A stretch of 63,480 bases of DNA, the filler included, from Octopus bimaculoides (Eukaryota), in assembly GCF_001194135.2 (NCBI RefSeq). It is 7 parts of 5 records of this genome, joined end to end, with 100 filler letters (N's around TTAATTAATTAA, not from the genome) between each part and the next. Parts side by side here need not be neighbours in the genome. Positions count along the whole stretch, not along the records: positions 1 to 28,895 come from NC_068990.1; 6 more parts are not named here. One strand, given 5' to 3'. Under the pieces are notes generated by a model. It was not told the origin of the DNA. It worked only from the letters and a program-made list of their open reading frames with translations, and did not search any database. Shown here in pieces: positions 1-24,530 of this stretch. Position 1 is the first letter of the stretch; each line of letters opens with the position of its first letter. Made by a program: the position numbers and the translations under genes.

Positions 1-300
1 AAAGAGTATAGGGGTGGGTTAGGGAAAATGGGGTGGGTGGTGGGATCGAACTGGAGGCGACGGAAGGCCCGTAGGATCCTCCGACGAAGGGGTAGGGTGG
101 CAGGGTGGAAACGGAGTGGGAAGGGGGTACGGTTAGAGGATTGGTGTGGGGGAGGAGAGAGGGCGGTGATGCGGTCGATTCGACGAGCGCGGGCGAGGGC
201 GGATTGGATAAGGTGGGAGGGAGTATTTATACACAGAGAGGCAACCCTTTACAGAGTGCCTTACTTGTTAGATAGGGCAGCCAAACCCAAACCACGAAAA
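1..300 (-). mobile_element. Penelope-like element fragment (RT thumb / linker to GIY-YIG)
   Basis: Minus translation ...LIQSALARARRIDRITAL...PFPLRFHPATLPLRRRILRAFRRLQFDPTTHPIFPNPP resembles the PLE C-terminal RT region. CpGs intact. Runs off the window. Confidence 0.6.
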
Positions 301-422
301 AAGTAATTCCAAAGAGAATGGAAACATTATTTACAGTTAATCCCAAACTCATTTCTGTATTAATGAACAAATAAATTAATTTGTCATCTGTACTTCATCA
401 GTGGGATCATCTAAGACAATGA

Positions 423-3226: not shown

Positions 3227-3459
3227 ATATATATATACATACACATATATTGAAGATGAAGTAGATGCTATGTAACTTTTTGTAACCTTGAAGGACCACA
3301 AAGACATTTTTATGCAAAACCATAGCTGTAGAATGAAAAATCACACAACAAAGCGAAACAGGTATTATCAGCAAATCTAAAGATAACATCATACAACAAA
3401 TCAGAGCATCCTCAAACCTTACTTAATGGATATGTAGTTGTGCAAGCATCAAATCATCA

Positions 3460-5640: not shown

Positions 5641-5669
5641 CTTTGCTCCAACCAGAGATTTGGTCAGTT

Positions 5670-6620
5670 GCCCTCAGTAGATTGTCTCAAGTGAATGGTC
5701 CAAGAAAATTGAAGATAAGCCCAAATGCAAATTCATCCAGTTCGATATTGTCGAGTTTTACTCCTTGATCTTCAAACCAAAAGGCACTCAAATTTAGTAA
5801 AACATATACAACAGACACTAACATCAATATAGTCATTGCTTTTTCATAATACCTACTGGGTGAATAGAATGGGGATGAGTTATTTGATGTCACTATAGGG
5901 AGATATGATAGAGCAAAGATAGTGGATCTAAGCCTTTACATCCTACATGCTTTTAAAAACAAAATAAAAGAAGCCAATATAGGATTATATTGTGATATAT
6001 ATATATTATGTACTATTATTAATACATAATAAAAAAAATGGACATGATATGGATAGAAAAATATACAAAATATTTAGTTGACCTAAAAAATTTCAATTAA
6101 CACAAACCTTAAAGAAGTTAGTTTCCTAGATATTAATATGAATCTTAGCACAGGCAAATTTAAACCCTCCCATAAACCAAATGAAGACACGTCCTACATT
6201 GACAGAGGCTCTAACCATCCAGTGTCAATAATCGGACAATTAGTTAATAGTGTTAGTAGGCATATTTCCAACCTATCTGCCAATAAAGCTACTTTCAAAA
6301 AAAGTAGCCCTATATTATAATGCCACATTAGAAAGGTCCAATTTTAAGAATTGTATAACCTATATTGAATCAAATATAGATAGACAATAAAAGATATAGA
6401 CAGAGAAAAACATTATGGTATAATACCCCATACAGCATGAATATAGCTACAAATATAGCTAGAAAATTTCTGTAACACAAAGACACCCACTTCTGACACT
6501 CACATAAATAACACAAGATCTTCAATAGATGTACAGTTAAAGTTAGCTATAGTTGCTTTAACGCAAAGATCAATGATTTTCAATCACAAAAATAACAACA
6601 TTAATATCAATCAATGCTAA
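5670..6620 (+). mobile_element. Penelope-like RT fragments
   Basis: EWSKKIEDKPKCKFIQFDIVEFY (5690-5760); FLDINMNLSTGKFKPSHKPN...SNHP (6120-6320). Confidence 0.75.
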
Positions 6621-6699
6621 CATACTTATATATTTAGCTTTAAGATTCTGTTGCTTGCCTAGTGTACCAGTGTTATTATTCTTGTTCTTAGTTGTCTTA

Positions 6700-7200
6700 T
6701 TTATATTAAACTTCTAATTGTATTTACTCTTATAGCACACCCTATGAAAACTAATCAGATTCATTACACAATCATTATTGGGTAGCTTTATAAGTGGTAA
6801 GATTAGGGACATAGTAAATTTTTTCTTTATATCCAGCTTCAGATAAAGAGTGGGATATTTTTAACAATAAAGTTAATGATATTTTTAGAATGATTAGAAT
6901 TTTTACTTACATACCTTGAGTATTCACTCAGTTTGTGGTATGGTTGGCATAGTCTTGCGCTCAAGTTAAAGATAACATCCAGGAAGTTAATTCTGCTATA
7001 TTCATTTTCAAAGAGATAGACAAACTAAGACTATTAAATGATCTAAAGAATTTTACAGGACCTTACTAGATCTATAGATAGTAAAAAGAGCACCATCCCT
7101 ATATAATCTTCCCCCTGATGCAAGAAATCCACTATGTATACAATTAAGAATACAAATCTCCACTAAGTCTAGTTTTTTCAGCTGTGTATTTTTGTACCTG
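6700..7200 (-). mobile_element. Penelope-like RT fragment, opposite orientation
   Basis: Minus translation contains LVEICILN...GRLYRDG (GLYRDDGL-like) and FLDVIFNLSARLCQPYHK. Confidence 0.65.
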
Positions 7201-7229
7201 GTTTCCACTTACTACATACATACGTAAAG

Positions 7230-7590
7230 TTCCCATCTATGTTTTAACATCATCTCCTTTGAAATAGTCACCTTGCAATCCTGCCACTTTTAGTCCCAGT
7301 GTTCCTTCCCCATTTAGATTCTTATGGAAAAGTAATTTTTCATAAGCAAGTCAAGGACCTTCTGCGATTCACTCTGGATCTTGACAATGGTGTTAAAATG
7401 GTGACCTTTGAGTTGCATTTTCATCTTGGGGAATGGACAGAAGCCGGCAGGTGCTAGATATAATGATGATGTAGCAGAGGCTCAATTACTCTTGACCTTT
7501 AGCTACCCATATTGTGGCTTCTTTCTTTTAGCTACCTATTTTTGGTTCATCATGTGATGGTCCAGTCCACTTAACTTTACTTGGACTGTC
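7230..7590 (-). mobile_element. mariner-like transposase C-terminal relic
   Basis: Minus translation DLAPAGFCPFPKMKMQLKGHHFNTIVKIQSESQKVLD matches the mariner PDLAPxDF.LF motif region. Confidence 0.7.
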
Positions 7591-7679
7591 CACCCCTTAA
7601 CACGATGGACTCACCTAGCATCCCTATGTCAGCTATTTAAAGGACTATTTTCCCCGCTAATTCTTAGGAAAGTGAGTTT

Positions 7680-8027
7680 TGCTATGAGCAATTTTGGATC
7701 TTTGATGTGAGAGCAGTTTGATTCCACTATGCAGCTTCAGCCTGAACAGAATTGTAACCAGAATCCTTGACGCTATGTTTAGTGTCTTACCAACATTTTA
7801 AACAGAACTGTAACCAGAATTTTTGATGCTATGCTTCAGGTTTTTCTAACCTTCTATCTTCCATTTTGAATCTATACAATAAATTGACAATTATTAATGT
7901 CCTACCAGTTTGCTGTATATAATTTTAGCAATGGCAGTAAATGTTTCAGTGCAGTCAACTATAACTTGCCTTTGCATAACATTATCAGACCTTGAACCGC
8001 ATTTCATACAGCAACCATCATTGCTAA
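7680..8027 (+). repeat. 5' LTR remnant
   Basis: Direct repeat of 14488-14897 (tgctatgagcaa...caaccatcattgctaa), followed immediately by a PBS-like site. Confidence 0.75.
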
Positions 8028-8031
8028 TAAT

Positions 8032-8049
8032 TAGTGACCCTAACGTGAT
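8032..8049 (+). promoter_or_regulatory. Primer-binding site, tRNA-Trp type (decayed)
   Basis: tagtgaccctaacgtgat vs TGGTGACCCCGACGTGAT (complement of the tRNA-Trp 3' end). Three transitions, two in one CpG. Sits directly 3' of the left LTR. Confidence 0.7.
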
Positions 8050-10243
8050 AGACAACATAGCTATGGAGAATTTTGCAGAAATATCTGACCCAACCATAAA
8101 ACTTTTCATAGAATTATATTCAACCAACTTTAGAACTGCTTTGCAGAAAAAATTCATCCAGCTACCAAAGTAATGCCATTTTCAATCTTAACGTTTTGCC
8201 ACCACTTTAGTGACATAAAAGTTTAAAATATTTTTTAACAGCAAAACTGGTAACATTTGTCAATTCTGGTTTACATGTTATAATATTATTTGGTGTATTG
8301 TGAAAAGTCTTTAAGTCAGAAAACTCCTTTTCAAACCTGTTTTAGCTATTTTTAAAGTTTTCAAGCTACGACTGTGAGACAAAATTTGCACATATCTTTT
8401 ACCCCTTACTACTCCTCCAGTGTTTTTGATAATATCGCTTACATCATGTGCTGGAAATAGCAGTCAAATCAGCCACTCATATTTCCTGAATTAAGTACCC
8501 ACCAAATTTTCATTTTGGTACAATTCACTTTTTGATAATTTACATATCATGGCATATTCTCCAGTATCTTCAATTGCTTCTGAAATTCCTAATACATTAC
8601 CAATGCAAGCTTCCATATCATTTGTTTCTCCACAATTTAATGGTTCTCACAGTTACAGACAATAATATAACTTCTGATGTCAGGCAATCACATTTATTAG
8701 TCAGTGTTTTGCCTCTGGTTATAAGTAGTGAAGTTAAAGATCTCAGTAACAATAACACAGATAACCCATCATATTTCACTTTGAAAGCAGAAATTTTGTG
8801 GTATACAACTTCTTCAAAAGAGAAACAATACCACCAATTAATGTATAATGAGACTCTCAGAGATAAGCGCCCTTCTCAGTTGCTTTGATGGCTGAGGGAT
8901 TTAGCTGGAAGCAATCCCATAGATGAAGATATAGTGAAACAATTATTTTTCACTAGGATTCCCAGTAATGTACAAGCAATTCTGATCACCATCAAGGAGC
9001 TTAACTCCACCCAGCAATGGCTGGTATGGCTGATGAAATCATGGACATTTCTTCTCCAGTTTCACAAGCTTCTGAAAGTTCTGTCATTTCATCATTATTA
9101 ATGGAACTATCTGTTTTCTGAAAGGAATTTGATAACAAGATCCAAAAATTAACTGAACAATTCTCTCATTGCTATCTCCTGTGTTTTCTCCTCACTCAAG
9201 GCAACAAAGTCAATCATCTTCTCGTAACTGTTGTTCCTCCAGAAGTTCATGGCAATATTGTTGGTATCATCAAAAATTTGGAACTCATGCACACAAGTGT
9301 GTATCAACATGTGTTTTTCCTTTTTCAGTTCAACCTCAAGAAAACTTTATTCCCAGGTATTAACTGCGACTACATTCTTGGATAAGTCATCAGAATGTCA
9401 CATCTTTTTCATTCCCAATGCCAACTCTAACCAACAGTTATTAGTTGATAGCGGTGCTGCATGTAGTGTCTAGCCTGCAAGTTTTATTACTTATTTATGC
9501 CAATCAGCCACTATTTCATTAATCATTCATCAATTCTCACCTATGCAGAAAAGTTGTTCACTTTGGACATCAACCTTTGCAGACCATTTCAATGATCTGC
9601 AAACCTTCCATATCCAATTCTTGGTGCTGTCTTCGTACAAACCATTTCCATCTCTTAGTTGAGTTGAGGAATAAGAGACTAATAGATACACAGACTCTTC
9701 TTTCTGCTCAAGGTTCATCTTCCAGAACTGCTACTGTTAGTCCTCTATTTTTTATTCCATTTCCATTTCCTTCAAATGTTTTTCATGAGCTGCTACCAAA
9801 ATGTCCAGAGTCGATCCAAACTGTTTTTCAAAATAGATCTCCATCACACATCATATTCTTACTAAAGGTCCTCCTGTGGTTTCCATTCCTCAGTAACTTG
9901 CCCCAAATAAACTTTAAGTTGTAAAGGATGATTTTCATCACATGCTTGACTGAAGGAAAATTTGCCCTTCTAGTAGTATCTTGTTTGAAAGAAAAATTTG
10001 ACAGCTGGAAACTTTGTTGAGATTATTGTTATTTGAATGCCATGACAGTTCCTGATCATTATTTGATATCTCACTTACATGATTTTTCAACATCTTTTTA
10101 AGGCTGCACCATCTTCTCTAAAATCGATTTGGTGTGAGCTTATAACTAAATTCCTGCTGAACCTTCCAACATACTTAAGACCACCATAACTTTCTCCTTT
10201 TAGCTTTTTTGTATTTGTGCAGATGCTGTTTGGTTTATGGTAA

Positions 10244-10460
10244 CTTCATCATCATTTAGCGTCTGCTTTACATGTTAGCATGGGTTGGACGATTTGACTG
10301 GGGACTGGCGAACCAGATTGCTACACCAGACTCCAATCTGATCTGGCAGAGTTTCTACAGCTGGATGCCCTTCCTAATGCCAACCACTCCGAGAGTGTAG
10401 TGGGTGCTTTTTACGTGCCACTGGCACGAGGGCCAGTCCGGTGGTACTGGCAACGGCCAT
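10244..10460 (-). mobile_element. RTE 3'-tail fragment inserted in the Gypsy RT
   Basis: catcatcatttagcgtctg...gctggatgcccttcctaatgccaaccactc interrupts the RT after the FGL motif. Confidence 0.85.
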
Positions 10461-11660
10461 GGTTGTGGTTTAAATTTTGTCTTCTCTTACACTGATGTAA
10501 CATTTAGCACATTTACAGCAACTTTTCACTCATCTGATGAAATATGGTGTCATTATTAATGCTAGCAGGTGCATGTTCAGTGTCCCTTCTCTCACTTTTC
10601 TAGGACATTCGATTGACAAGGATGGCATATGTCTATTACCAGTGAAAATTGAAGCTATCTGCAATTTCCCTATCCCTACTTCATTATGGAATTTACGCGA
10701 GTTTCTTGGTCTCATTAATTTCAACAGGATATTGATTCCTCAGTGTATGGAGACTATCTGAACTTTTATGAAATTGTAAAAAGAAAAATGAAACTATATC
10801 ATGAGATTCTTTTCACCTACAAGCATTTGAAGATATCAAGAAGTTATCCGGAGTAACACTGTTAGCTCACCCCATTCCTGAAGCACCTTTATCATTAATG
10901 GTTGATAGATCTAATGTAGGGGTAGATGCAGTTCTTCAACAGTTGGTCAGTGGTAACTGGCAACCACTTGCTTTTTTTTTCTCGTTGTTTCAAACCTGCT
11001 GAGTCTAGACATAGTACTTTCAGTAGAGAGTTACTGTCTGCTTATCTCACTGTTAGACATTTCTGACATTTTCTTGAAGAATGCCAGTTCACACTTTTTA
11101 CAGATCACAGACTATTAACATTTCTTTTGAAATTGACATCCAATAAATATTCTTCTAGAGATTTGTGACATCTGGATTTCATTTCTCAGTATACCTTAGA
11201 CATCCAGTATATCAAGGGTGTGGATAATTCTGCAGCTGATGCTTTATCTTGCGTTCATATTAACATTTTGCACACTACTGATTCAATTGATTTGCAACAA
11301 TTAGGTTTGGATCAAGATAACAATCAAGAACTTTCATTTCTCAAATCATCAGATTCTCACTCTTTGGACCTCTGGCTGTTACCATTATTTTCTTCAGATT
11401 CTTCTATCTGGTGTGTTGTATCTACTGGTGTATCTCTGCCTTATGTTCCTAAGGAGCACAGATGATCAGTATTTTCAGTGTTCTATAATTTGTTTCACCC
11501 CGGTAACGGTCAAATTGATTTCTAGTTGTTTTGTTTGGCCCAGTATGTGAAAGGATATTTGACATTGCACATGAACCTGCATTTCATGGCAGAAGACTGA
11601 AGCGCAACATCATATTCAGGCACCTTTGGGTACTTTTGCCACCTCGAATGCATGCTTTAA

Positions 11661-12721
11661 CCCTTTCGTTACCAAACCGCCCGAAAAAAATTTTGGTTCA
11701 TGTGACCAAGCCGCCCGTAATCACCTATTCATATTTAAATGAGAATATCCGAGCAAATCTTGTTAGTACATTCGTGAAAACACGTGATTATACTGCGTAA
11801 ACAGTTCAGCTATAGTTTTGTACGATGATCGACGTGTTTTTTTAGTTTTTTTAATTTTGTGAATTTTGTGAGATTTTTTTCCAAATTTGTAATCCTGACA
11901 AAAAAATGGATACGAATTTTATTCTGTCAAGCAGCGAGTCAGAATTCGAAGGATTTTCGATTGAAGACCTTGATAAATCTAACTCTGTAACCGAAAAAAA
12001 AAAGCACGTGGTATTTGATAATGAATCTGATGTTTCATTTTCCGAAAATGAAAGGAGTGAATCTGTGAGCTCCGATGATAGCGATAAAGAGAATGAATTG
12101 GTACCTGAATGGAGTGAAAATTTAAAAACTCCTTCTTTCAGTGATTTTTCTGAAGAAACTGGACCAAGTCACAGTCTTACCCAGGGGAGTAAAGCTTTAG
12201 ACTATTTCTTTTTGATTTTTCCGATGTACCTATTTGAATTGATTACGGCGGAAACAAACCGTTAAGCTAAATGTAAACAAAGCGTAAAAAAGGATAGTTT
12301 GTGGTTTCCCACAAACTTGAATGAAATTAAAGCATATTTTGCCATAAATATTATTATGGGCATTAGAAAGTTACCCAGAATTACAAATTACTGGAGTAGT
12401 GATGAACCCTTTGGAGATGAATATGTCTCAATGACGAGGACACGGTTTTTAAAATTGACTTAATATCTACATGTAAGAGACACGAGCAGTACACCAGTAC
12501 GTGGAGAACCAGACTTTGATCCCTTATTTAAAATAAGACCCCTCATTGACTGTTCAAAACACATATAAAACAGTTTATAGACCAGGGAGACATTTATCAA
12601 TTGATGAGGGTATGGTGGGCTATAAAGGCCGAGTGTGTTTTTGACAGTATATGCCAGGAAAGCCCACAAAATGGGGGATCAAAGTTTGGAAAATTTGTGA
12701 ATCAAATACTGGGTACTGCTC
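11661..12721 (+). mobile_element. piggyBac DNA transposon (left end plus disrupted transposase); right end hidden in gap 12722-13664
   Basis: TTAA (11657-11660) followed by CCCTTT terminus; 13-bp subterminal repeat accaa[a/g]ccgcccg at 11671 and 11705; ORF from ATG 11906 with LDYFFLIF...AETNR, IIMGIRKLP, IDEGMVGYKGR, YMPGKPTKWGIKVW (PGBD-type DDE). In-frame stops present. Confidence 0.92.
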
Positions 12722-14487
12722 NNNNNNNNNNNNNNNNNNNNNNNNNNNNNNNNNNNNNNNNNNNNNNNNNNNNNNNNNNNNNNNNNNNNNNNNNNNNNNN
12801 NNNNNNNNNNNNNNNNNNNNNNNNNNNNNNNNNNNNNNNNNNNNNNNNNNNNNNNNNNNNNNNNNNNNNNNNNNNNNNNNNNNNNNNNNNNNNNNNNNNN
12901 NNNNNNNNNNNNNNNNNNNNNNNNNNNNNNNNNNNNNNNNNNNNNNNNNNNNNNNNNNNNNNNNNNNNNNNNNNNNNNNNNNNNNNNNNNNNNNNNNNNN
13001 NNNNNNNNNNNNNNNNNNNNNNNNNNNNNNNNNNNNNNNNNNNNNNNNNNNNNNNNNNNNNNNNNNNNNNNNNNNNNNNNNNNNNNNNNNNNNNNNNNNN
13101 NNNNNNNNNNNNNNNNNNNNNNNNNNNNNNNNNNNNNNNNNNNNNNNNNNNNNNNNNNNNNNNNNNNNNNNNNNNNNNNNNNNNNNNNNNNNNNNNNNNN
13201 NNNNNNNNNNNNNNNNNNNNNNNNNNNNNNNNNNNNNNNNNNNNNNNNNNNNNNNNNNNNNNNNNNNNNNNNNNNNNNNNNNNNNNNNNNNNNNNNNNNN
13301 NNNNNNNNNNNNNNNNNNNNNNNNNNNNNNNNNNNNNNNNNNNNNNNNNNNNNNNNNNNNNNNNNNNNNNNNNNNNNNNNNNNNNNNNNNNNNNNNNNNN
13401 NNNNNNNNNNNNNNNNNNNNNNNNNNNNNNNNNNNNNNNNNNNNNNNNNNNNNNNNNNNNNNNNNNNNNNNNNNNNNNNNNNNNNNNNNNNNNNNNNNNN
13501 NNNNNNNNNNNNNNNNNNNNNNNNNNNNNNNNNNNNNNNNNNNNNNNNNNNNNNNNNNNNNNNNNNNNNNNNNNNNNNNNNNNNNNNNNNNNNNNNNNNN
13601 NNNNNNNNNNNNNNNNNNNNNNNNNNNNNNNNNNNNNNNNNNNNNNNNNNNNNNNNNNNNNNNNAATTGGTCCTTTGCCACCAGCACAAGATTATCTATA
13701 TTTGTTGACCTGCATTGATCATTTTTCAGGATGGCCTGAAGCCATTCTTATCAAGGATATCTCAGCTCTTACAATCGCAAAGGCTGGATGGATCTCGCAG
13801 TTCAGAGTTATTGTCACTACTGATTGTGGTCAACAGTTCAAATCAAATATTTTTGCAGAGCTCTCAAAATTACTAGGTCCGCAACAAATCTGTACCACTG
13901 CTTATCACTCCATGGCTAATGAGATGATAGAGAGATTTCATTGTCAGATAAAATCTGCTTTACGTGTTCATCCCCATTCAGACAAATGGTTGGAAGCATT
14001 ACCGGCTGTTCTCTTAGGTCTTTGGTCTGTTGTTAAGGAAGACCTAGACTTTTCTCTGGCAGAACTCCTCTACAGTGCCCCATTCTGTTTATTTAGCCAG
14101 ATGATCATAACTTCAACTCCTGAACAAATTTCTGATCTGGTTGATTACATACATCGTTTATGGAATTACATAAAAGAATTACCTCCTTTAGTTACTAAAG
14201 CACAGTCTATCAAGTCTTTTGTGCTTCCTGATATATGTTCATGGACTCATGTTTTTATTTACAACAATCTTGTTAAACAACCTCTTCAAGCTTCTAACAG
14301 TGGTCCTTACCAACTTCTTAAAGTAAAATCTAAATTTATGGTATTAGATGTTAAATGGCAAACAACAAACTGTGAGTATTGATCACATTAAACAAACATT
14401 TATTAATTCATCTACATAACAAGAGTTTACTCCAACTACAAACACGACGCTTACAGATTCTGCACTTTCAACTACATCACCTTGAAC

Positions 14488-14897
14488 TGCTATGAGCAAT
14501 TTTGGATCTTTGATGCAAGTGCAGTTTGATTTCCTTATGCAGCTTCAGCTTGAACAGAATTGTAACCAGAATCCTTGACGCTATGTTTAGTGTCTTACCA
14601 ACATTTTAAACAGAACTGTAACAAGAATTTTTGATGCTTTGCTTCAAATTTTTCTAACCTTCTATCTTCCATTTTTATGAACATTGGAACCTATACATCT
14701 ATACAATGTATTGACAATTATTAATGTCCTACCAGTTTGCTGTATATAATTTTAGCAACAGTAATAAATGTTTCAGTGCAGTCAACTCTAACTTGCCTTT
14801 GCATATGTTTATTGATATCTACCCTGACTTCATTTAACAGAAGACATAAAACTATCAGACCTTAAACCACATTTTATACAACAACCATCATTGCTAA
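14488..14897 (+). repeat. 3' LTR remnant
   Basis: Diverged copy of 7680-8027 with small insertions, ~100 bp after the integrase. No clear polypurine tract seen. Confidence 0.7.
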
Positions 14898-15182
14898 AAT
14901 GATATCACTGCCATCAATTTTCAAATAACTTGCTCAATGATCTTTTAGTCATTTACTTATCTTACTGGCAGACATAAGCAGAAATACTAATTACTTAGGC
15001 TAATATGGCTATTTCAGTTACTGCACCTACTCACTTGAAATATACCTACATCACACATCCCAGAACTCTTATCTATAAAGAAGAATTTGTAATAAGGTTC
15101 TTTATCTTCAAAGAGTCTGACTGAATTGAAGCATCTCTAAATATCAGCTGTCAGTAACAAAAAGAAAAAAAAACAAACTTAC

Positions 15183-15265
15183 TTTTTAAGTTGAGAATAA
15201 ACAAACGGAAGGTATTTAAGTTTCTTTGTAGCAGCTTTTTTTGATTGGTTTAACTCTCTATCTTC
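15183..15265 (-). CDS. IWS1: IWS1 exon (83 nt), EDRELNQSKKAATKKLKYLPFVYSQLK
   Basis: ccttttag|GAA...AA|gtaagt. Not in the ORF track. Start of the TFIIS-N-like domain. Confidence 0.93.
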
Positions 15266-18200
15266 CTAAAAGGAAAGCCAAAAATTATTTTAGTTGAAAA
15301 GATTAACATGTGCATTCTACATGCATTGTTACCATAAAAGCAGTAAGCTATCAGTTATCCAAATCAGCCAGTTTCATTCTTGATAGAAACATTCCATTTT
15401 ATTTCCTTTACATCTTGTCCCAGTATTTTCTAGTAGTAGTCAATACTTTAAAGAGTGCAATTACTTCGTACACAACACAAAAGACAAAATGGACTTTCTG
15501 GCAACAGTGAATACTTTGAAGAGAGCTTCATTCAGCTGACTTTTACATAATACAATGATGAGACTGGTTTCATGCATTTCACAATTTTTTTTCTGTATTT
15601 ACTGTCATGCTATTCAAGAGTGGATTTTTTAATTTACTTTATCACACACCAGTTAATAAGATCTGCTACTTCCCTCATAACTAATCCTCATAGGATAAAA
15701 ACAGAGTGTTCTTTTTATGCTAGGCTTATGAAGAAAACTTTGCAAGTAATAGATTTCCAGGGCACCAAGAATGAAAGGATGGTTTTTCACATTTAGATAT
15801 TTGAATATTGCTTGAAGAGTTATTTTTACAGTTCATATGCTTCCTGCCACAGAACCACAGAATAGGAGTGAAGTCTACTATTAGCAAGGCAAATTAAGGT
15901 TAACAGTTTTGTGCCTTGGTTAGAACAGTATAATGGCAGTAATGAGGTCTAAATTCAAAACCATGGAGGAGTGGGATTAGTAACTCAAAAACATAAGTCA
16001 CAAATTATCTTAGATAAATAAAAATACAATAAAATGAAATAAAACCTATTTTATTTGAAAATATTTCCAAACATTCTTTTGTTTAGAATATTGCAATGGA
16101 AGTGCACTGAAATTGAGTATCATCAAATTATATTTACTAAATTTTATTTAAATGTTGAAATTCTTTTTCAAACAAATTAGTCATTATACAGAAATTGGCC
16201 TGCATGTTTACTGTCATATTTAACACAAAACCTTGCGTTATTTTTAAGTTGTGAAATTGACTTTAATTTATGAAAGATAAATGATGAGCTTCTCTATAAA
16301 AGATATCAATAAAGCAAGAAGTGGAGGATCCTACAGGCAGAAAGACAGACAATCAGACACCAGAGAAAGAAAAATGAGAATATGACAAAAATCAAACTGT
16401 ACCTCAGCAGCTAACTTCATTTTCTGTACCATATCAGCAATAAGGTCATCATTATCATTAATGATGTCAATATCTTTCCGCCTGCGACGATTCCCTTGTC
16501 GTTCAGCTTTCTTCTTTTCTAGCATGATATCGAAATCAGATACAAAATCCCTGGTCAAAGAGTAAGAGGAAGAGTTTTAAAATTTTTAATGAACTAAAAG
16601 TTGATATATGCATTTAAGTAAGAACAAATATGACATATAATAAGAGAATATACTAAAAATGTCGATGTATACTATATAATAATGTATCAATAATCTGTCT
16701 ACCGCCAAGGATCATGCAATTATTCCTGATCACTAAGCTGCAAATATATTTATTTTTATATATCTTTACCTTTATGAAAGTCCTCAAGAATCAAAAATTG
16801 AATCTCCTCAAAATTTAAACCTTGATATAAACACTGAATGTCTGTCTATTTTTGAGAGAGAATGACTATGACTCTCTCAATTCTACTAACACTTCTTTTC
16901 CAACACATTGTCAAACATTAGGTTGCTACCACCACCATCATCATCATCATTTTAATTTTTTCATGCTTGCATTGGTAAGAAGGAATATAGTTGGAAACAG
17001 ATAAATTGTGTGTATCCGCACATTTATATTAATATACCTAATAAGAAATCATTCTATCAGTGCCTAGTTTTTCATTTGTGCCCTTAAGTCTACCATGTAT
17101 GGTTTTAGCGCCTTAATATCACAGTACACCTTTAAAAGGCATATTGTGATATTTCAGATTGGTATTTCCAGTTGCATGTAATGCCATAAAGTAGTTGCCT
17201 TGAATATAGATTCACTTGTCATGATCTGTTAATAAATTAGCATGAGGTCTTCATTATTGGGCACTTCATTATTGGCCATGGTGCTTCTTGCACAAATTAA
17301 TTTTACAATTAGTGAACAATAATCCAGCAATTTAATTCTATTAAGTCAGTGGGGAATGTTTTACAATACTGGATTAAATTGAAAATGTTGTCAAAAACAG
17401 CTTGACAGCACTTTAATTTAATTCAGTATCATAAAACATTCCCTGCTGACTTAACAGAATTAAGTTGATGGATTATATGTTCACTAATCATACAATTAAT
17501 TTGTGCAAGGAGTACCATTTTTAGAGTTAACCTTCTGTTAGTGCACCAATAATGAAGACATCATGCTAATTTACTAACAGATCATGACAAGTGAATTCAT
17601 ATTCATGGCAACTACTTTATGGCATTGCATGCAACTGGAAATACCAATCTGAAAATGTTAGCCAATATAGACTGGTATTGCTTATCTTCTCTTGGTGTAA
17701 TGTTATTAAATCTGGAGCTAAAAAAAAGCATTATGACATCTTATGACATCTGAAGACAATTATATCAGAGATATGCAATGATCAAAGAGGGAAGCGAAGT
17801 GGCTGAGAAATAGTTAAAATAATGTTTTGCATATCTTTCAACATTATTATGAGCTTAGAGATCCGTTTTTCACCAGGTATTTTAGAAATTCTCTCACTTT
17901 TCAAACACTTCTTCAATCATAATACCTCTAGTTATATACTTTAATCTTCTTCATTATAACTCTTAGATATTATTTTAATTTTATCATTATTGTGTAAAGC
18001 TGGATATATGAGTAATCAAATGTAGCACTGCAAGAAAAAAATTGTACTGATTTGGGCATTTGATGTGCATAGAAAATGACAGCTGTAAATGAAAGAGTCT
18101 TGTACTCACAGTAAATAGCACCTCTGGAAGAAGAGACTGAAGGGAAAATTAGGACTCAAGATGTATCTCACAAAAGAGGTGGCAAAACATGTTAAATGGA

Positions 18201-21200
18201 GGAACTGGTGGAAGCTGGGGTATATGCAGTCAGGTCTCTAACTTACATTGTCACCTACAAAGTTTCTGTATGCTTCCCATTCAATACTCTCACACCTCTC
18301 TCCAAAATATTGCACCATAACACCAAATACAGTTTCTTACTGCCAACCATTTCTATGTCTATCCATCACTTGCCCACTCTCTCTCTCTCTCTCTCTCTCA
18401 CTAGCAAACAAGCAACTACCACTAATGTGTTTTTCTCTCATAATAACACCTGAATAATGAGGTTTTGCATTGGATCTATCAGTATACTCTGCACTACCCC
18501 TTTTGTGCTACTCAGAATCCCTCCCTCTTCCTCAAACCACCCTATTATTCGACATCCATCACATATGCTCTTTCTTATAAGATAACATTACTACCTCTTC
18601 TATACAGGTAGCTGCCACTTCCTCTCTCCTAGATGACTTATTATTGACATCCATTACACATTCCTAACATTTCTGACACTTGCACTTTCTCACACCTGTA
18701 AATATGTAGCTGCTATTATTGCTGCTACCTTATTATGGCATCACTGGCTCTCATTATACCATGCCTTTGTCTCTCTTCATCATTCCTCTAGCACTGTCTC
18801 CTATTTCTACCTCCCCTTCCACACTATTACTTCAATCATTCTATTCCTCATTTCATAAACTCTCTTCTTTCTCCTTTTCATCCTATTTCAGTTTTTACTA
18901 TCACCCTCTCTCCTGCCCACTCTCTTAGTTCTGTTGCCCTGAGCAAATGGAGAACTACAGCAGCAAGGACCCCCTTTTTGTCTTGCAAGGTTCAAGGCAA
19001 TCTATCTAGTGCCAGTGTTTCAACAAAATGTACCTGGTACATCCTGTAAAGCAAAGACAGAATAGAGTTGAGAGGATTCTTTAGTCCTATTATGTCAAAG
19101 ACACGGCTGGTTTCATGATAAAATGCACCACTACAGGCTGTAAAGTGGTTGATGTTACAAAGGGCATCCAACCACCAAAGCCATTCTAAAAGAATGTATT
19201 ACAAGTGAGATAAGGGAGAGGTACTGTCTTCCTAATTTTGGTCCCTTGACCAAAACTAGGAGGGTTGTAAGAAGTAACTTGAAGTAAGAACAAATTAAGA
19301 CCTTGGTAACCACCTATTCAATCCATGCCCGTATCCAAAGTGGAAGTAAAAAAAAAATGTTGATAATTATTTCATGTGATTTTTATAAATCTGAAAATTC
19401 TGAGACACGCTCAGGTCAAGAAACATTGCATTAATTTAAGCCAGCCATCTCTCTAGTGTGATATCAGTACACAGCATTAAAATTGCACTTCCTCGTACCA
19501 ATAATATCAATGCCTGAAAATTAAGGCTTTTCACTTTATTTTTTAAATAAATACTTACTCTCTTTGTGAATCTCGAACAATTTCTTCATTTTCATCATCT
19601 GATACCAGAGGAAGAACTTCATTATTGTCATCATTCAAATCAGTCTTTTGTTGATCATCATCGTCATCGTCATCATCATCATCATTACCATCATCATCAT
19701 TATCAGCTTTCTTTTCCTTCCTCTTGGGAACAGCTTCTACATCAGCCTCACCAAAACCCTTGTGAACAAGAGATGAATACAAATAAAATTGTATTTCAAA
19801 AAGAAATAGAAAATGTTTTAAAATGATATCTAACACACATGAGATATTTATTGATGTGAAATTAATTCTGATGACTTCAGATGTAATGGCAAACTCTGAT
19901 TAATGCAATTTTCAAAGGAATTAAAACAAATGTGAAATAATTCTAATCAGGATCATGGAGTTAACTCAGTAGTCTTCACTATAGTTCAGATGACAGAAAT
20001 CCCTGATTACAATATATTGTGTATAATTAAAAACCAGTGCACAAGTGTCATCAAAATTTATGACGGCTTTATTAATTATGAAAAATGCTTTTCAGTAAGA
20101 AAAACATCGTTTCTTTTATAACAATCTTTACTGCAAATACATTATGTAGTTTATTTTCAGTATGTAAAAGAAAAGGTACAATTGAAGACAAAAACTACTT
20201 AGTGTTTCTTTTAAAATAAATGCGTGTGTATAAGGTTAAGAACTTTCAGGTTGGATTTCACTGTGTAACATCTTAGACTAAGTACCCTCTTCTATAATCT
20301 TGGGTTGACCAATAAGTTGTGAGTGTAATTTAGTAGACAGAAACTGTATGAATGCCCATAATACATGGGAAAGATGAGTGAGTAAGTGTGTATTGCACTT
20401 GGTTTGACATGAGCATGACTGCAAACAAAAGTCATCATTCATTAGAGGAGTATCAACAATATTTGTTTGTAACTTTGTTGATTTTTTTACATGCAGATTT
20501 GAAATTTTGTCAGCAGGTGTTTAAATACCAATGATTTACAATTATGAATTTTTACCTTTCTTTTGTTTGTTTCTTAAATTTGACATCAATGGACAGGTGG
20601 AAATAATCAAACAGGTGTGGAAGCAATGACTTCATAGACAAACACTAAAATTGAACCACTGTGTTTTAACAGCTGTTTTGCTGCTAAAATTATTGAACAA
20701 TGACCCATATGTCAACCTCTAACAATTACACCACTTTTCAAGAACAGGTGAATAAATATGAATTAGTCAAATTGCAGGTATAATCAGCACAGGATTTTAT
20801 TCTTTTTTTGTCATTGAAAAGCAAGTATAAAATCCTTTTACAAGTCAATATACTATTGGCATTGTACTCTAACACATTTTACTATGTAGATTTACTTAAC
20901 AAAATGTGTCCAGTAAAAAATACATATTAATAGGTGAGACACAGATGAATACAGAAATGCACATACTGAAAATTATTATATATTTCCATTTCTGCACATT
21001 ATTTGTGTTCAAATTCAAAGAATTTATAATATTTGCATTTCTGTCAAACTACAATACAATAAAATATATTTATGCTATATTCTTATCATGAAAGTGTCCA
21101 AAGCTCCCTTTATACAATGGCACTTAAGTTGATCCCTTCAGCAGCTTTTCTCTTGTGCAATGAACACATTCAGCACATTTTTTTCCTATCACTTATTTTT

Positions 21201-22797
21201 CAGTTATGAAAATCAATATTCTCTGTTTATATCCACATCAGTTAATTTTGCTTTTCTCACAGCTCTTTTTGAAGCCTGTCTTTAAAAGACGTTCATTTTA
21301 AAAACACTCTAATAAAGAAGAGTATTATCAATTTCTTTAGGCCATCATGTTTTGCAACACGGATTCAGTTTGTGTGTGCATACGCCTCTTAGTCTTAGCT
21401 CCTCTTGCTTACCATGGAGCACTGGGCAACAAGATCTCCATAGAGCATGGTTGCAAGCCCATCCAAAGCTTGCTCCCAGGCCAAGCCTATGCCTGCCAAA
21501 TCTTGCTCCAGAGTTATCAACCACCCTCACTCTAAAGTAAATTATAACACCCTCACTCTAAAATAAATCCATACTAATGAAAAACAACTATTCTTAAGCA
21601 AAGCTATTCTTAGCTTCGAAGTAGCTAAATCTAGACCTGATATTTCTCAATTCAGAGTAAAAAAAAATTAAAATGTCAATGGAAATTAAACAAACAGGCC
21701 AAAGTGATCTACTTATTGCAGACAATTTTTTAAACATAACTTTCCCTTTGAAAACGACCTGAGAGTATTTCTGAACAGTAAAATTGTTGAAAAACTATCA
21801 ATGAACAAAACTTAGATTTGTCTGCTATATAAGAAATTGCCATATATTTTAACTCAAACCTCAATCCTCTCCATCAAATCATAGAAACATTATTCATTTA
21901 GAATACATGTTTGTACCAATAAGCCCAAATTAAAAACATTTATTCTCACTAATATAAACTTTTAAGCACCCAACAATTAAAATATATTCAAAAGTCATTT
22001 AAGATCATTAACATTCAATGATCATAAGTTACTATAATGTGGCATCACACTCAATATAGATCTAAATTACTAGTGACATAAAGTAATACCTCAAACTCTT
22101 CATCTTCATCACTCGAGCCAAAAATATCAGCAATGAGTTTCTCACCAGTCCTGCAAGATAGAAGAGAGTGTGTGTATGTGTGTGTACACACACACATGCA
22201 CACACAAACACAAAAGAAATACATGCAAACAAGTGTATGTATGTGCAAGTGTGTGCATGCATATACAGTCAGAATCATTTTGATATCTTGTGTTCTTGGT
22301 TAAGATAATTAAATTGGTTTCTTATGACATTAGCAATTGTTGGCATTCCGTCGCTTACAACGTCGAGGGTTCCAGTTGATCCGATCAACGGCACAGCCTG
22401 CTTGTGAAATTAACGTGCAAGTGGCTGAGCACTCCACAGACACGCGTACCTTTAACGTAGTTCTCGGGGATATTCAGCGTGACACAGTGTGACAAGGCTG
22501 ACCCTTTGAATTACAGGCACAACAGAAATAGGAAGTAAGAGTGAGAGAAAGTTGTGGTGAAAGAGTACAGCAGGGTTCGCCATCATCCCCTGCCGGAGCC
22601 TCGAGGAGCTTTAGGTGTTTTCGCTCAATAAACACTCACAATGCCCAGTCTGGGAATCGAAACCGCGATTCCGCTGCCCTAACCACTGGGCCATTGCGCC
22701 TCCACGACATTAGCAATATACAGAGATGAAAGATTAGTCAATTATAGTAAAACTTACTCCTTATCACTTTCATCATCTTCATTTTCACTTCCTTTGG
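15183..22797 (-). CDS. IWS1: IWS1 (Spn1) transcription elongation factor homolog, partial; visible coding exons span this interval
   Basis: Spliced translation KGSENEDDESDKETGEKLIADIFGSSDEDEEFEGFGEADVEA...RDSQREDFVSDFDIMLEKKKAERQGNRRRRKDIDIINDNDDLIADMVQKMKLAAEEDRELNQSKKAATKKLKYLPFVYSQLK matches the IWS1 architecture I recall (ADIFG..EEFxGF; SDF.MML..KK; KM..AAEEDR.LN..KK.A.KKL..LP). All four junctions are GT-AG and phase-compatible. Confidence 0.95.
16403..16550 (-). CDS. IWS1: IWS1 exon (148 nt), DFVSDFDIML...KMKLAAE
   Basis: ctttgaccag|G...GAG|gtacag. Confidence 0.95.
17152..17654. repeat. ~500-bp imperfect palindrome (fold-back / MITE-like)
   Basis: tttcagattggtatttccagttgcatg... is the reverse complement of ...catgcaactggaaataccaatctgaaa. 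Arms pair inward to a ~7-nt loop at 17395-17401. Confidence 0.92.
18940..19360 (+). mobile_element. Old RTE-type 3'UTR relic
   Basis: Degenerate gtggttgatgttacaaagggcatccaacc and ccatgcccgtatcc...aaaatgttgat tail. Confidence 0.5.
19559..19758 (-). CDS. IWS1: IWS1 exon (200 nt), GFGE...RDSQR, with poly-Asp (GAT)n
   Basis: ttcacaag|GGT...GA|gtaagt. Confidence 0.93.
20240..20350 (+). mobile_element. Heavily decayed tRNA-derived SINE (family A)
   Basis: Degenerate copy of ...ttgggcaagtgtcttctactatagcctcgggccgaccaaagccttgtgagtggatttggtagacggaaactg, with CpGs lost. Confidence 0.5.
22090..22150 (-). CDS. IWS1: IWS1 exon (61 nt), TGEKLIADIFGSSDEDEEFE
   Basis: tcttgcag|G...GAG|gtatta. Confidence 0.93.
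22338..22705 (-). mobile_element. Full-length tRNA-derived SINE (family C) with 12-bp TSD
   Basis: TSD gacattagcaat at 22326-22337 and 22706-22717; A/B-box-like head (ggcgcaatggcccagtggtta...gtttcgattccc). Confidence 0.92.
22758..22797 (-). CDS. IWS1: IWS1 exon (40 nt), KGSENEDDESDK
   Basis: ttttacattctag|CC...GA|gtaagt. Not in the ORF track. Phase fits the next exon. Confidence 0.85.
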
Positions 22798-24053: not shown

Positions 24054-24126
<73 letters not shown>

Positions 24127-24530
24127 AAATAATAAATTCCAAAAGAAGAGAAGCTTAAAAAAAAACCCTAGAAAGGCCAAATAAACCAAGGTCACATATG
24201 CAGGAGTTTTACAACAAAAAAGGGAGTTAGCAGCAGGAAGGAGGAATGTGAGAAGCCATCTAGCTGGCAGTGAGTTTAGAAGTCTTGTTTAGGATGACAG
24301 ATAACACACAACACTTTCTATGCTTAAAATCAATATATATGGCAGTCTCAGCAGCAATAGTGGACAATTATCTCTCACTAGCATTATATAAATGAATGCT
24401 CATGTTCACCACAAGTCCATGAGTGGTTCTCTCACAGTAAATAACACAGTATTTTGTGTTATAATACAACATCCACTTTTAAGTGGGGATAAATATTACC
24501 TTTTGGTATTAATACTGCTTCTGGTGCTAT

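What the first reader, a model, noticed from the sequence alone, without database searches (positions are those of the whole stretch)
11918..11956. piggyBac transposase N-terminus carries a TIM/IBM-like motif with the same spacing as the host IWS1 motif
Seen: the transposase starts MDTN-FILSSSESEFEGF-S, and the IWS1 in this window reads I-FGSSDEDEEFEGF-G. Both are F-x8-F-E-G-F with a Ser/acidic linker. Established: acidic/phospho-Ser FxGF motifs (IBM/TIM) of IWS1, JPO2, MLL1 and the pogo-derived POGZ bind TFIIS-N-like domains such as the LEDGF IBD, and HIV integrase uses that domain to target active genes. Inference: this piggyBac lineage may mimic a TIM to dock on TND-containing elongation factors and bias insertion into transcribed gene bodies. 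Its presence in an IWS1 intron is one observation and may be coincidental. The strict E-x-E position is Ser here, so it would need phosphorylation. I do not know whether this has been described.
Basis: partly seen in the sequence, partly recalled or inferred. Interest (0 to 1): 0.8.

Follow-up and report, generated by a model that had tools for sequence, protein, structure and literature searches.

The report
IWS1-like docking motif on piggyBac transposases
A dead octopus piggyBac "jumping gene" starts with a short acidic F-x-G-F motif that is strongly conserved across a large animal piggyBac clade and closely resembles the peptide that the host elongation factor IWS1 uses to bind the chromatin reader LEDGF, which suggests, without proving it, how these transposons might choose where to land.

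Summary
Bases 11918-11956 encode F5-F17 (FILSSSESEFEGF) of a decayed octopus piggyBac transposase. The host IWS1 gene (minus strand) encodes LIADIFGSSDEDEEFE|GFGEADV across a splice junction, with the same F-x8-FEGF spacing. That peptide is the orthologue of human IWS1 TIM3, the LEDGF/HRP2-binding motif.

The motif is a family feature. F.GF occurs in the first 80 residues of 57 of 149 relatives that share under 50% identity (1.4 expected). It never occurs in their other 39,335 residues. In a set retrieved with the catalytic domain alone, 23 of 50 non-redundant proteins carry it (0.8 expected). It was the most over-represented pattern tested in the disordered N-terminus, among proteins only 31-58% identical in the catalytic domain.

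A profile built only from piggyBac N-termini gave three hits in the whole PDB. Two were the LEDGF-IBD fusions with IWS1 and JPO2.

The literature calls piggyBac N-termini non-conserved, and no searchable paper links piggyBac to FxGF. Binding to a TND and any effect on insertion sites are untested. The main rival is a CK2-regulated self-docking or dimerisation element.

The parts
11657..11660 (.). TTAA target site at the left end of the piggyBac copy
   Evidence: The sequence reads gcatgcTTTAACCCTTTCG. The same TTAA+CCCTTTCGTTAC junction occurs at related octopus copies in L001 and L003.
11661..11905 (+). Left terminal inverted repeat (CCCTTTCGTTACC...) and 5' untranslated part of the element
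   Evidence: The repeat matches once in the window, against 0 expected. The right end is not in the window and is presumably lost in the gap.
11906..12265 (+). Intact N-terminal ORF of the transposase: 119 codons plus a TAA stop, covering the disordered acidic N-terminus and the start of the DDE_Tnp_1_7 domain
   Evidence: It is 80% identical to a copy in O. sinensis locus L003.
11918..11956 (+). The finding: F5-ILSSSESE-F14-E-G-F17. An upstream hydrophobic residue, an 8-residue Ser/Glu linker, then FxGF.
   Evidence: F at -9 and both motif phenylalanines are kept in all 9 octopus copies examined; G is kept in 6 of 9.
11945..11971 (+). Core FEGF plus the conserved tail S-I-E-D-L. The family consensus is F-x-G-F-[TS]-x-[ED]-[DE]-[LIV].
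   Evidence: Position counts over 58 sequences. The tail [DE][LIVFM] at +7/+8 occurs in 38 of 58. IWS1 (FTGFNQEDL) and JPO2 (FAGFTQSD) have similar tails.
12023..12040 (+). Second N-terminal motif, E-S-D-V-S-F. The family consensus is E-S-D-[IV]-[DES]-[VIL].
   Evidence: The S-D pair is present in 94% of 94 full-length relatives. SDID and ESDI are among the most over-represented patterns. Its function is unknown.
12266..12721 (+). Decayed continuation of the transposase (first half of the DDE domain, including the LSIDE block), with several stops and one frameshift, cut by the assembly gap
   Evidence: The N run spans 12722-13664.
10900..11656 (+). Upstream flank: decayed LTR-retroelement pol (end of RNase H, start of integrase), into which the piggyBac copy inserted
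   Evidence: Pfam RT_RNaseH, E=1.7e-6; translation.
13665..14382 (+). Downstream flank after the gap: integrase core of the same retroelement
   Evidence: Pfam rve, E=1.8e-5, below the curated cut-off. The ORF begins IGPLPPAQDYLYLLTCIDHFSGWPEA.
22090..22150 (-). Host IWS1 exon encoding (E)TGEKLIADIFGSSDEDEEFE, which is the helix and acidic linker of TIM3 plus the first two residues (F-E) of FEGF
   Evidence: PDB matches are human IWS1 470-515 and 6EMR. Mollusc fragments read ELIADIFGSSDEDEEFEGFG.
19559..19758 (-). Next IWS1 exon, beginning GFGEADVEAV. It completes FEGF and the D-V tail.
15183..16550 (-). Two further IWS1 exons, 16550-16403 (DFVSDFDIMLEKKK...) and 15265-15183 (EDRELNQSKKAATKKLKYLPFVYSQLKK). 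The last ends in a gtaagt donor, so an intron follows that contains the piggyBac copy.
   Evidence: No later IWS1 exon was detected in 1-15182.

Best explanation
The 39 bases encode the N-terminal short linear motif of a now-dead piggyBac transposase. The motif is an acidic, CK2-phosphorylatable Ser/Asp/Glu run, followed by F-x-G-F, followed by [TS]-x-[ED]-[DE]-[LIV]. An upstream Phe often lies 8-9 residues before it. This motif was inherited across a metazoan piggyBac clade annotated 'PGBD4-like' and closer to piggyBat than to T. ni piggyBac. Members occur in molluscs, cnidarians and a chimaera.

It most likely works as a docking peptide that copies TIM3 of IWS1, the LEDGF/HRP2 IBD-binding motif. 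Once CK2 has phosphorylated the serines, the two phenylalanines would sit in the shallow second pocket of a TFIIS-N-terminal-type domain, and the acidic or phospho-serine run would lie on its basic patch. That would tether the transposase or transpososome to elongating chromatin marked by H3K36 methylation.

Shown here: the element, the motif, its conservation, and its sequence match to solved IBD ligands. Inferred: phosphorylation, binding to a TND, and any effect on target choice.
For: 1. Conservation in disorder.
- F.GF occurs in 57 of 149 relatives under 50% identical, against 1.4 expected, and 0 times in the other 39,335 residues.
- After retrieval with a catalytic-domain-only profile, 36 of 80 full-length proteins have it.
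- In the non-redundant set it occurs in 23 of 50 against 0.81 expected (z=24), the top pattern of the roughly 400 commonest tested.
- Carriers share only 31-58% catalytic-domain identity and are spread over most subclades.
- Flanking columns are at most about 0.2 conserved.

2. Match to known ligands.
- The profile of 58 piggyBac N-termini gave 3 hits at E<=10 among 177,635 PDB sequences.
- Hit 1 was 6EMR, LEDGF IBD fused to IWS1 ([21 protein letters not shown]). Hit 3 was 5YI9, LEDGF IBD fused to JPO2 (FIEDTDSETEDFAGFTQSD).
- The tail [DE][LIV] at +7/+8 is shared with IWS1; in JPO2 the solved chain ends at the aspartate.

3. The layout fits the published TIM anatomy.
- All known LEDGF/HRP2 ligands have FxGF.
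- Linkers are 8-16 residues, acidic and Ser-rich, and are phosphorylated by CK2 in IWS1, MLL1 and JPO2 (PMC9987994).
- Here 53 of 58 sequences have at least one minimal CK2 site in positions -8 to -1, and 35 of 58 have a hydrophobic residue 6-13 positions upstream.

4. Two relatives, P0280 and P0301, carry DIFGSSDEE/EIFGGSDEE and FEGF together, which is the whole IWS1 TIM3 layout.

5. The IWS1 motif with FxGF is near-identical in several mollusc-derived fragments. This implies that the FxGF-reading partner exists in these hosts.

6. The partner of the piggyBac N-terminal disordered region is an acknowledged open question. Scrambling the region impairs function (PMC9499001).
Against: - No binding data of any kind exist. 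A complex could not be modelled with the tools available.
- The two PDB matches have weak individual E-values (0.36 and 1.4).
- The review calls the TIM helix obligatory. About 40% of FxGF-bearing N-termini start only 7-10 residues before the motif and have no upstream hydrophobic residue.
- The strict E-x-E positions are acidic in only 10 of 58 sequences, so binding would depend on phosphorylation.
- A profile of the 'IFGSSDEE' subgroup did not retrieve IWS1 from the PDB.
- AlphaFold2 gives residues 11-20 of P0229 a pLDDT of 83, with a helix at 14-27 straight after FEGF. That fits docking on the transposase itself as well as on a host protein.
- For T. ni piggyBac and piggyBat, the only tested role of N-terminal CK2 sites is inhibition.
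- Some apparently intact relatives have FEVF, FSSF, FDAF or FDGVF instead of FxGF.
Confidence: 0.42

Rival explanations
1. The motif is an internal regulatory element of the transposase. The FxGF and the helix that follows it would dock on the transposase's own body or on its partner subunit, holding a pre-synaptic dimer or autoinhibited state. CK2 phosphorylation of the flanking serines would damp DNA binding. The resemblance to IWS1/JPO2 would then be convergent 'acidic plus aromatic' chemistry with no host TND involved.
For: - In T. ni piggyBac the N-terminus is multiply CK2-phosphorylated, phosphorylation inhibits transposition, and the N-terminus is needed for dimerisation. AlphaFold placed its first helix in trans (bioRxiv 10.1101/2022.09.26.509586).
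- In piggyBat, the closest solved relative of this clade (E=2.6e-58), Ser-to-Ala changes at four predicted N-terminal CK2 sites give hyperactivity (PMC11707139).
- The AlphaFold2 monomer model of P0229 gives residues 11-20 a pLDDT of 83 and a helix at 14-27, between truly disordered stretches 1-6 and 30-58.
Against: - It does not explain why the profile picks out LEDGF-bound IWS1 and JPO2 peptides from 177,635 PDB sequences.
- It does not explain why the tail at +7/+8 is shared with them.
- T. ni piggyBac and piggyBat are in the PDB as full-length chains and were not matched by the profile. The motif is therefore not required for the roles shown in those two enzymes.
- Sister subclades swap the whole N-terminal module while keeping the same catalytic body. 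That is easier to explain for an external partner than for an internal contact.
Confidence: 0.3
2. The motif docks on a different host reader of acidic-aromatic peptides. Candidates are the TFIIH p62 PH domain, a co-activator domain, a SUMO-related or chaperone site, or a repair factor. The purpose would be nuclear retention, chromatin access or repair of the excision site rather than TND-mediated targeting.
For: - Acidic runs with embedded aromatics are a common ligand class (own knowledge).
- The second, even more conserved motif E-S-D-[IV]-[DES]-[VIL] shows that the N-terminus carries more than one interaction element.
- The authors of PMC9499001 expect repair, chromatin or cell-cycle partners.
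Against: - No specific sequence match to any such ligand family was obtained.
- The only specific matches found were IBD ligands.
- The G between the phenylalanines is the commonest residue at its column (54% of 94 mixed relatives), and the F-x-G-F spacing is fixed. That is characteristic of FxGF motifs rather than of generic acidic activation-type peptides.
Confidence: 0.15
3. The resemblance is a chance or compositional effect in a low-complexity acidic, Ser-rich region, or a piece of IWS1 captured by this copy, with no function.
For: - The region is low-complexity.
- Similarity between the transposase N-terminus and octopus IWS1 outside the motif is not significant: 406 of 2000 shuffles score as high.
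- The window copy itself is a pseudogene.
Against: - Composition-preserving shuffles give 1.4 and 0.81 expected occurrences, against 57 and 23 observed.
- The motif is conserved among proteins with 31-58% catalytic-domain identity from several phyla. It is therefore neither chance nor a local capture in octopus.
- The similarity to IWS1 is limited to the motif, which argues against recent exon capture.
Confidence: 0.03

Closest known systems
IWS1 TIM3 / LEDGF-HRP2 IBD-binding motifs (IBMs) of IWS1, JPO2 (CDCA7L), MLL1, POGZ, ASK, MED1
   Same: - An acidic, Ser-rich CK2-type linker followed by F-x-G-F in a disordered region.
- An upstream hydrophobic residue 8-10 positions before (IWS1 LIADIF-x10-FTGF; octopus IWS1 F-x8-FEGF; this transposase F-x8-FEGF).
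- A shared acidic-aliphatic tail at +7/+8 (seen in full in IWS1).
- IWS1 and JPO2 are the specific PDB matches of the piggyBac profile (anatomy from PMC9987994).
   Different: - The motif sits at the extreme N-terminus of a transposase.
- Positions -2 and -4 are mostly Ser rather than Glu.
- Many family members lack room for the upstream helix that the review calls obligatory, and a predicted helix follows the FxGF instead.
- Binding is untested.
Tethered integration of other mobile elements: lentiviral integrase-LEDGF/HRP2 IBD; from own knowledge also gammaretroviral integrase-BET ET domain and Ty5 integrase-Sir4
   Same: The proposed logic is the same: a mobile-element enzyme binds a chromatin reader and so biases where it inserts. 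LEDGF/HRP2 TNDs are known to be hijacked this way (PMC9987994 'viral mimicry').
   Different: From own knowledge, lentiviral integrase contacts the IBD through its folded catalytic core, not through a TIM-like peptide. Here the candidate is a true mimic of a host linear motif, on a cut-and-paste DNA transposase. Nothing functional has been shown.
N-terminal disordered regions of T. ni piggyBac and Myotis piggyBat
   Same: - The same superfamily and the same position: acidic, disordered, rich in CK2 sites.
- Functional importance has been shown, with phosphorylation inhibitory and sequence order important.
   Different: - Those N-termini are described as non-conserved and impossible to align.
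- They lack the FxGF motif: the full-length chains 6x67 and 9c0f were not matched by the profile.
- No partner has been identified for them.
POGZ (pogo-transposase-derived host protein with an IBM)
   Different: POGZ is a domesticated host gene of another superfamily (pogo). The proteins here look like transposases of mobile, multi-copy piggyBac elements, with clusters of 20-97 near-identical members. POGZ did not reach E<=10 with the piggyBac profile.

Membership tests
piggyBac superfamily transposon | TTAA target site and a terminal inverted repeat beginning CCC | tested here: met
   TTAA at 11657-11660 followed by CCCTTTCGTTACC. It is unique in the window, and the same junction occurs in related octopus copies. 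Only the left end is present.
piggyBac superfamily transposon | Transposase with the DDE_Tnp_1_7 (PF13843) catalytic domain | tested here: met
   E=1.9e-42 over profile positions 2-168 of 349. The closest proteins are Octopus sinensis piggyBac-derived entries.
piggyBac superfamily transposon | Complete DDD catalytic triad, C-terminal Cys-rich domain, right terminal repeat (an intact, autonomous copy) | tested here: not met
   The reading frame has stops and a frameshift, and the sequence is cut by the N run 12722-13664. No right end is in the window. This copy is a relic. Intact relatives exist elsewhere.
TND-interacting motif (TIM) / LEDGF IBD-binding motif (IBM) | F-x-G-F in an intrinsically disordered region | tested here: met
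   FEGF at residues 14-17. In the AlphaFold2 model of relative P0229, residues 1-6 and 30-58 have pLDDT below 50 around the motif. The literature describes piggyBac N-termini as disordered.
TND-interacting motif (TIM) / LEDGF IBD-binding motif (IBM) | Acidic residues just upstream (E/D-x-E-x-F-x-G-F) or Ser/Thr made acidic by CK2 | tested here: inconclusive
   The window reads S-E-S-E-F-E-G-F, with Ser at -4 and -2 and Glu at -3 and -1. S8, S10 and S12 fit S-x-x-[DE]. In the family, strict acid at both positions occurs in 10 of 58, [DEST] at both in 40 of 58, and at least one minimal CK2 site in 53 of 58. Phosphorylation itself was not tested.
TND-interacting motif (TIM) / LEDGF IBD-binding motif (IBM) | Upstream short helix with a hydrophobic anchor, 8-16 residues before FxGF (called obligatory in PMC9987994) | tested here: inconclusive
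   The window has F5-I6-L7 with an 8-residue linker, but only 4 residues precede F5. A hydrophobic residue 6-13 positions upstream occurs in 35 of 58 family members; the others start too close to the motif. The predicted helix lies after FxGF, not before it.
TND-interacting motif (TIM) / LEDGF IBD-binding motif (IBM) | Physical binding to a TFIIS-N-terminal-type domain, lost on F-to-A change | not testable with these tools
   Complexes and fused constructs could not be submitted to the structure tool. No biochemical data exist in the searchable literature.
IWS1 (host gene in the window) | Orthology to IWS1, including the TIM3 region and the start of the conserved C-terminal half | tested here: met
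   Exon peptides match human IWS1 470-515 as the best PDB hits. Further exons DFVSDFDIMLEKKK... and EDRELNQSKKAATKKLKYLP match the IWS1 C-terminal half (the query was recalled from memory). Splice sites are canonical. The HEAT/TND exons are outside the piece.

The most novel reading that the evidence does not exclude
A metazoan-wide clade of piggyBac DNA transposons carries a faithful, phosphorylation-dependent mimic of IWS1 TIM3 at the transposase N-terminus. It would use this mimic to ride on LEDGF/HRP2-type H3K36me3 readers or other TND elongation factors, directing cut-and-paste insertion into transcribed gene bodies. Sister subclades that swapped this module for other N-terminal motifs (MAFxFL, ILxxYxDAxG, IFGSSDEE) would dock on other host factors. 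On this reading the 'non-conserved' piggyBac N-terminus is an exchangeable targeting cassette.
Probability: 0.3. Interest if true: 0.85.

Novelty: new variant of a known kind. Interest (0 to 1): 0.7.

Why it matters
The role and partners of the roughly 100-residue disordered N-terminus of piggyBac transposases are an open question. Reviews and structural papers call the region non-conserved and impossible to align.

This work shows a sharply conserved linear motif there in a large natural clade. The motif matches peptides already solved in complex with the LEDGF IBD. That turns the question into a direct experiment: peptide binding, F-to-A mutants, and integration profiling with and without LEDGF/HRP2.

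It would parallel lentiviral use of LEDGF, and it would explain intronic accumulation of such elements. It would also offer a small transferable peptide for steering piggyBac-type gene-delivery vectors.

If it is false, the motif still marks a conserved regulatory element in this clade, probably CK2-controlled.

Tried and rejected
1. Exon capture from IWS1. Local alignment of the transposase N-terminus with spliced octopus IWS1 is significant only because of the motif (6 of 2000 shuffles overall). The rest is not significant (406 of 2000). There is no support for capture.

2. 'IFGSSDEE'-type N-termini as mimics of the IWS1 helix. A profile of 16 such N-termini did not retrieve IWS1 from the PDB. 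The top hit was an unrelated villin-headpiece peptide. This is kept only as a loose resemblance.

3. Taxonomy through cluster members. Ten clusters returned no names. Names came instead from the profile search.

4. Primary TIM papers (PMC8943916, PMC6065015) are not held. The TIM anatomy was taken from the review PMC9987994, and the TIM3 coordinates from PMC13175633.

5. The right end of the element was not found in the window.

6. IWS1 exons downstream of 15183 were not found in the piece. The intron assignment therefore rests on the donor site and on the missing essential C-terminal exons.

7. The first protein search, with the window's 272-residue conceptual translation, gave only 20 hits with few N-termini. 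The representative search and the catalytic-domain profile search were needed.

8. Insertion context of other octopus copies. One copy is intronic and antisense in a photolyase-like gene. One lies between TAF1-like and AASDHPPT-like genes. One cluster lies about 270 bp from an ATP-synthase gene. This is too few for any inference.

9. The AlphaFold2 monomer model could not distinguish self-docking from a conditionally folding host-binding element. No contact map or error matrix is returned.
Full report
WHAT IS AT THE COORDINATES

The window comes from an octopus. The closest proteins are Octopus sinensis and O. bimaculoides piggyBac-derived entries.

At 11657-11660 there is a TTAA followed by CCCTTTCGTTACC, the left end of a piggyBac-like element. 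After about 245 bases of leader, an ATG at 11906 opens a 119-codon ORF:

MDTNFILSSSESEFEGFSIEDLDKSNSVTEKKKHVVFDNESDVSFSE...

The conceptual translation matches Pfam DDE_Tnp_1_7 at E=1.9e-42.

Bases 11918-11956 encode F5 to F17, and FEGF lies at 11945-11956. This is the only F.GF in a real ORF of the piece.

The copy is dead:
- an in-frame TAA at 12263;
- further stops;
- a frameshift near 12570;
- an assembly gap at 12722-13664 that removes the rest.

The element inserted into an LTR-retroelement pol gene. RNase H sequence lies upstream and integrase core downstream of the gap.

THE HOST IWS1 MOTIF

On the minus strand, exon 22150-22090 ends ...KLIADIFGSSDEDEEFE|gtatta, and exon 19758-19559 begins ...cacaag|GFGEADVEAV.

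The peptide's best matches in the PDB are human IWS1 residues 470-515 ([30 protein letters not shown]) and entry 6EMR, a fusion of the LEDGF integrase-binding domain with that IWS1 segment. A 2026 paper places TIM3, the LEDGF-binding motif, at human residues 482-491, that is [10 protein letters not shown] (PMC13175633).

Other IWS1 exons lie at 22797-22758, 16550-16403 and 15265-15183, all with canonical splice sites. The last visible exon ends in a gtaagt donor, and no later exon occurs in 1-15182. The exons for the essential HEAT/TND domain must therefore lie beyond the piece.

Both peptides read F-x8-F-E-G-F.

IS IT MORE THAN CHANCE?

Biased retrieval. An exhaustive HMMER search with the octopus relative P0002 returned 149 new representatives that share under 50% identity with each other.
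- F.GF occurs within the first 80 residues in 57 of them.
- Composition-preserving shuffles give 1.4 (maximum 7).
- F.GF never occurs in the remaining 39,335 residues.

Unbiased retrieval. The query carried the motif region, so I repeated the retrieval with a profile of 20 catalytic domains with the N-termini removed.
- Of 80 proteins of at least 540 residues, 36 have F.GF in the first 90 residues.
- In a set filtered to under 60% identity, it occurs in 23 of 50 against 0.81 expected (z=24).
- It is the single most over-represented of the roughly 400 commonest four-position patterns tested. It ranks ahead of the first blocks of the folded domain and of a second motif, SDID/ESDI.

Spread. Carriers are only 31-58% identical in the catalytic domain (median 40%) and occur in most subclades of a neighbour-joining tree.

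Conservation profile. Along the N-terminus of 94 full-length relatives there are two peaks in an otherwise unconserved stretch:
- F-x-G-F, with F 50%, G 54% and F 46% of all sequences, including subclades that lack the motif;
- E-S-D-[IV]-x-[VIL], with S and D at 94%.

Extended consensus from 58 sequences:
- F or M at -9/-10;
- alternating S/D/E from -8 to -1;
- F-x-G-F;
- [TS] at +4, [ED] at +6, [DE] at +7 and [LIV] at +8.

Octopus copies. Nine copies from at least two subfamilies all keep F at -9 and both motif phenylalanines. Six keep the glycine; three decayed copies have S, A or E.

Hosts. Named hosts of carriers include gastropods, bivalves, the octopus, a sea anemone and the chimaera Callorhinchus. 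NCBI labels the clade 'PGBD4-like'. Many carriers belong to clusters of 20-97 near-identical sequences, so some families look recently active.

DOES IT RESEMBLE A TIM/IBM SPECIFICALLY?

A profile built only from the 58 piggyBac N-termini was searched against all 177,635 distinct PDB sequences. Three sequences reached E<=10:
- first, 6EMR, LEDGF IBD fused to IWS1, aligned at [21 protein letters not shown] (E=0.36);
- second, an unrelated ribosomal protein L10 (E=1.1);
- third, 5YI9, LEDGF IBD fused to JPO2, aligned at FIEDTDSETEDFAGFTQSD (E=1.4).

Each E-value is weak on its own. But only a handful of PDB entries contain such ligands, so two of three hits being those ligands is not what chance gives. 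IWS1 shares the full tail after FxGF, an acidic residue then an aliphatic one at +7/+8; the JPO2 chain ends at the acidic position.

The TND review describes the anatomy of these motifs (PMC9987994):
- an anchoring helix;
- an acidic, Ser/Gly-rich linker of 8-16 residues that CK2 phosphorylates in IWS1, MLL1 and JPO2;
- an FxGF that every known LEDGF/HRP2 ligand has.

In the piggyBac set:
- 53 of 58 have at least one minimal CK2 site in -8 to -1;
- 10 of 58 have the strict acidic residues at -4 and -2;
- 35 of 58 have an upstream hydrophobic residue at a suitable distance.

Two relatives, P0280 from an anemone and P0301, carry DIFGSSDEE/EIFGGSDEE and FEGF together, which is the complete IWS1 layout.

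WHAT ARGUES FOR CAUTION

1. Nothing shows binding. The tools could not model a complex.

2. About 40% of carriers have no hydrophobic residue upstream of the motif: the protein begins 7-10 residues before FxGF, leaving no room for the helix the review calls obligatory.

3. A profile of the 'EE[YF]HDIFGSSDEE' subgroup did not retrieve IWS1.

4. In the two transposases that have been studied, the acidic N-terminus is CK2-phosphorylated or predicted to be, phosphorylation inhibits transposition, and in T. ni piggyBac the N-terminus is needed for dimerisation. piggyBat is the closest solved relative of this clade.

5. An AlphaFold2 monomer model of the carrier P0229 has mean pLDDT 89.5. Residues 1-6 and 30-58 are disordered, but residues 11-20 reach pLDDT 83, with a helix at 14-27 directly after FEGF. 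This looks like a conditionally folding element. It could dock on the transposase, on its partner subunit, or on a host protein, and the output does not say which.

6. Similarity between the transposase N-terminus and IWS1 is confined to the motif. The relation is therefore convergence or mimicry, not a captured exon.

WHAT IS KNOWN AND WHAT IS NEW

Full-text searches found no paper that mentions piggyBac together with FxGF, the TFIIS N-terminal domain or TND-interacting motifs in this sense.

The piggyBac literature states that:
- the N-termini 'cannot be aligned' or are 'non-conserved';
- a systematic screen is needed to find its partners (PMC9499001).

T. ni piggyBac and piggyBat, both present as full-length chains in the PDB, were not matched by the motif profile. 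This may be why the motif has been overlooked.

The known kinds it resembles are the LEDGF/HRP2 ligands (IWS1, JPO2, MLL1, POGZ and others) and tethered integration by lentiviruses through the same domain. A mobile DNA transposase carrying a true mimic of a host TIM would be a new variant of these.

VERDICT

- Docking on a TND-type domain: about 0.4.
- The full story including insertion bias: about 0.3.
- The self-regulation rival: about 0.3.

The location inside an IWS1 intron is one event, and the direct target was a retroelement sitting there. It carries no evidential weight.

Noticed in passing
window 12023-12040 (+); relatives in alignment A4: A second N-terminal motif, E-S-D-[IV]-[DES]-[VIL] ('ESDVSF' here), lies about 25 residues after FxGF. 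Its S-D pair is present in 94% of 94 full-length relatives, so it is more conserved than FxGF and also occurs in subclades without FxGF. It resembles a CK2 site followed by a SUMO-interaction-type hydrophobic core. Its function is unknown.
   Followed up: partly
relatives P0206-P0316 and P0021-P0169: Sister subclades with the same catalytic body carry other N-terminal modules instead of FxGF: 'MAFxFLxxL', 'ILxxYxDAxG' and 'EE[YF]HDIFGSSDEE'. The module type follows the catalytic-domain tree, as if the N-terminus were an exchangeable cassette.
   Followed up: partly
window 10900-11656 and 13665-14382 (+): The piggyBac copy is nested in a decayed LTR-retroelement pol gene (RNase H before it, integrase core after the gap). 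That retroelement in turn lies in an IWS1 intron.
   Followed up: partly
window 12722-13664 and 985-1728: Two runs of N (943 and 744 bases) are assembly gaps. The first hides the rest of the transposase, the right end of the element and the junction with the retroelement.
   Followed up: yes
window 17152-17654: A palindromic element with 109-base arms 94% complementary, plus inner arm pairs, looks like a MITE or foldback element. It lies in the IWS1 intron between the exons at 19.6 kb and 16.5 kb.
   Followed up: no
window 423-1742 (+), 25959-27043 (-), 27903-28208 (+), 4058-4375 (-): Several fragments of one non-LTR retrotransposon family occur on both strands. They include reverse-transcriptase blocks and a Cys-rich 'CxxCxKxxHxxC' segment.
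   Followed up: no
window 2144-2578 (-), 10362-10388, 19144-19170 and other places: A short repeat that translates as '...LQLDALPNANHSESV...' recurs many times on both strands. It is probably a SINE- or MITE-like octopus repeat.
   Followed up: no
L003 (O. sinensis CM016867.1) 153-7974: At least four copies of the same piggyBac family lie within 8 kb. One is a 1.08-kb internally deleted derivative (1598-2676) that keeps both ends and the N-terminal ORF with FEGF. Another is a 2.58-kb copy with both terminal repeats (5393-7970).
   Followed up: partly
relatives P0027, P0223, P0225, P0227, P0239, P0300: Shark and ray 'PGBD4-like' genes have a decayed version of the motif (VFDGI, AFEGH, VFGDS), while the chimaera Callorhinchus keeps FKGF. 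This may reflect domestication with loss of the motif.
   Followed up: no
window about 22150-22330 and about 24100-24250: A (CA/TG)n tract lies just upstream of the IWS1 TIM3 exon, and a long (TA)n microsatellite lies at about 24.1 kb.
   Followed up: no
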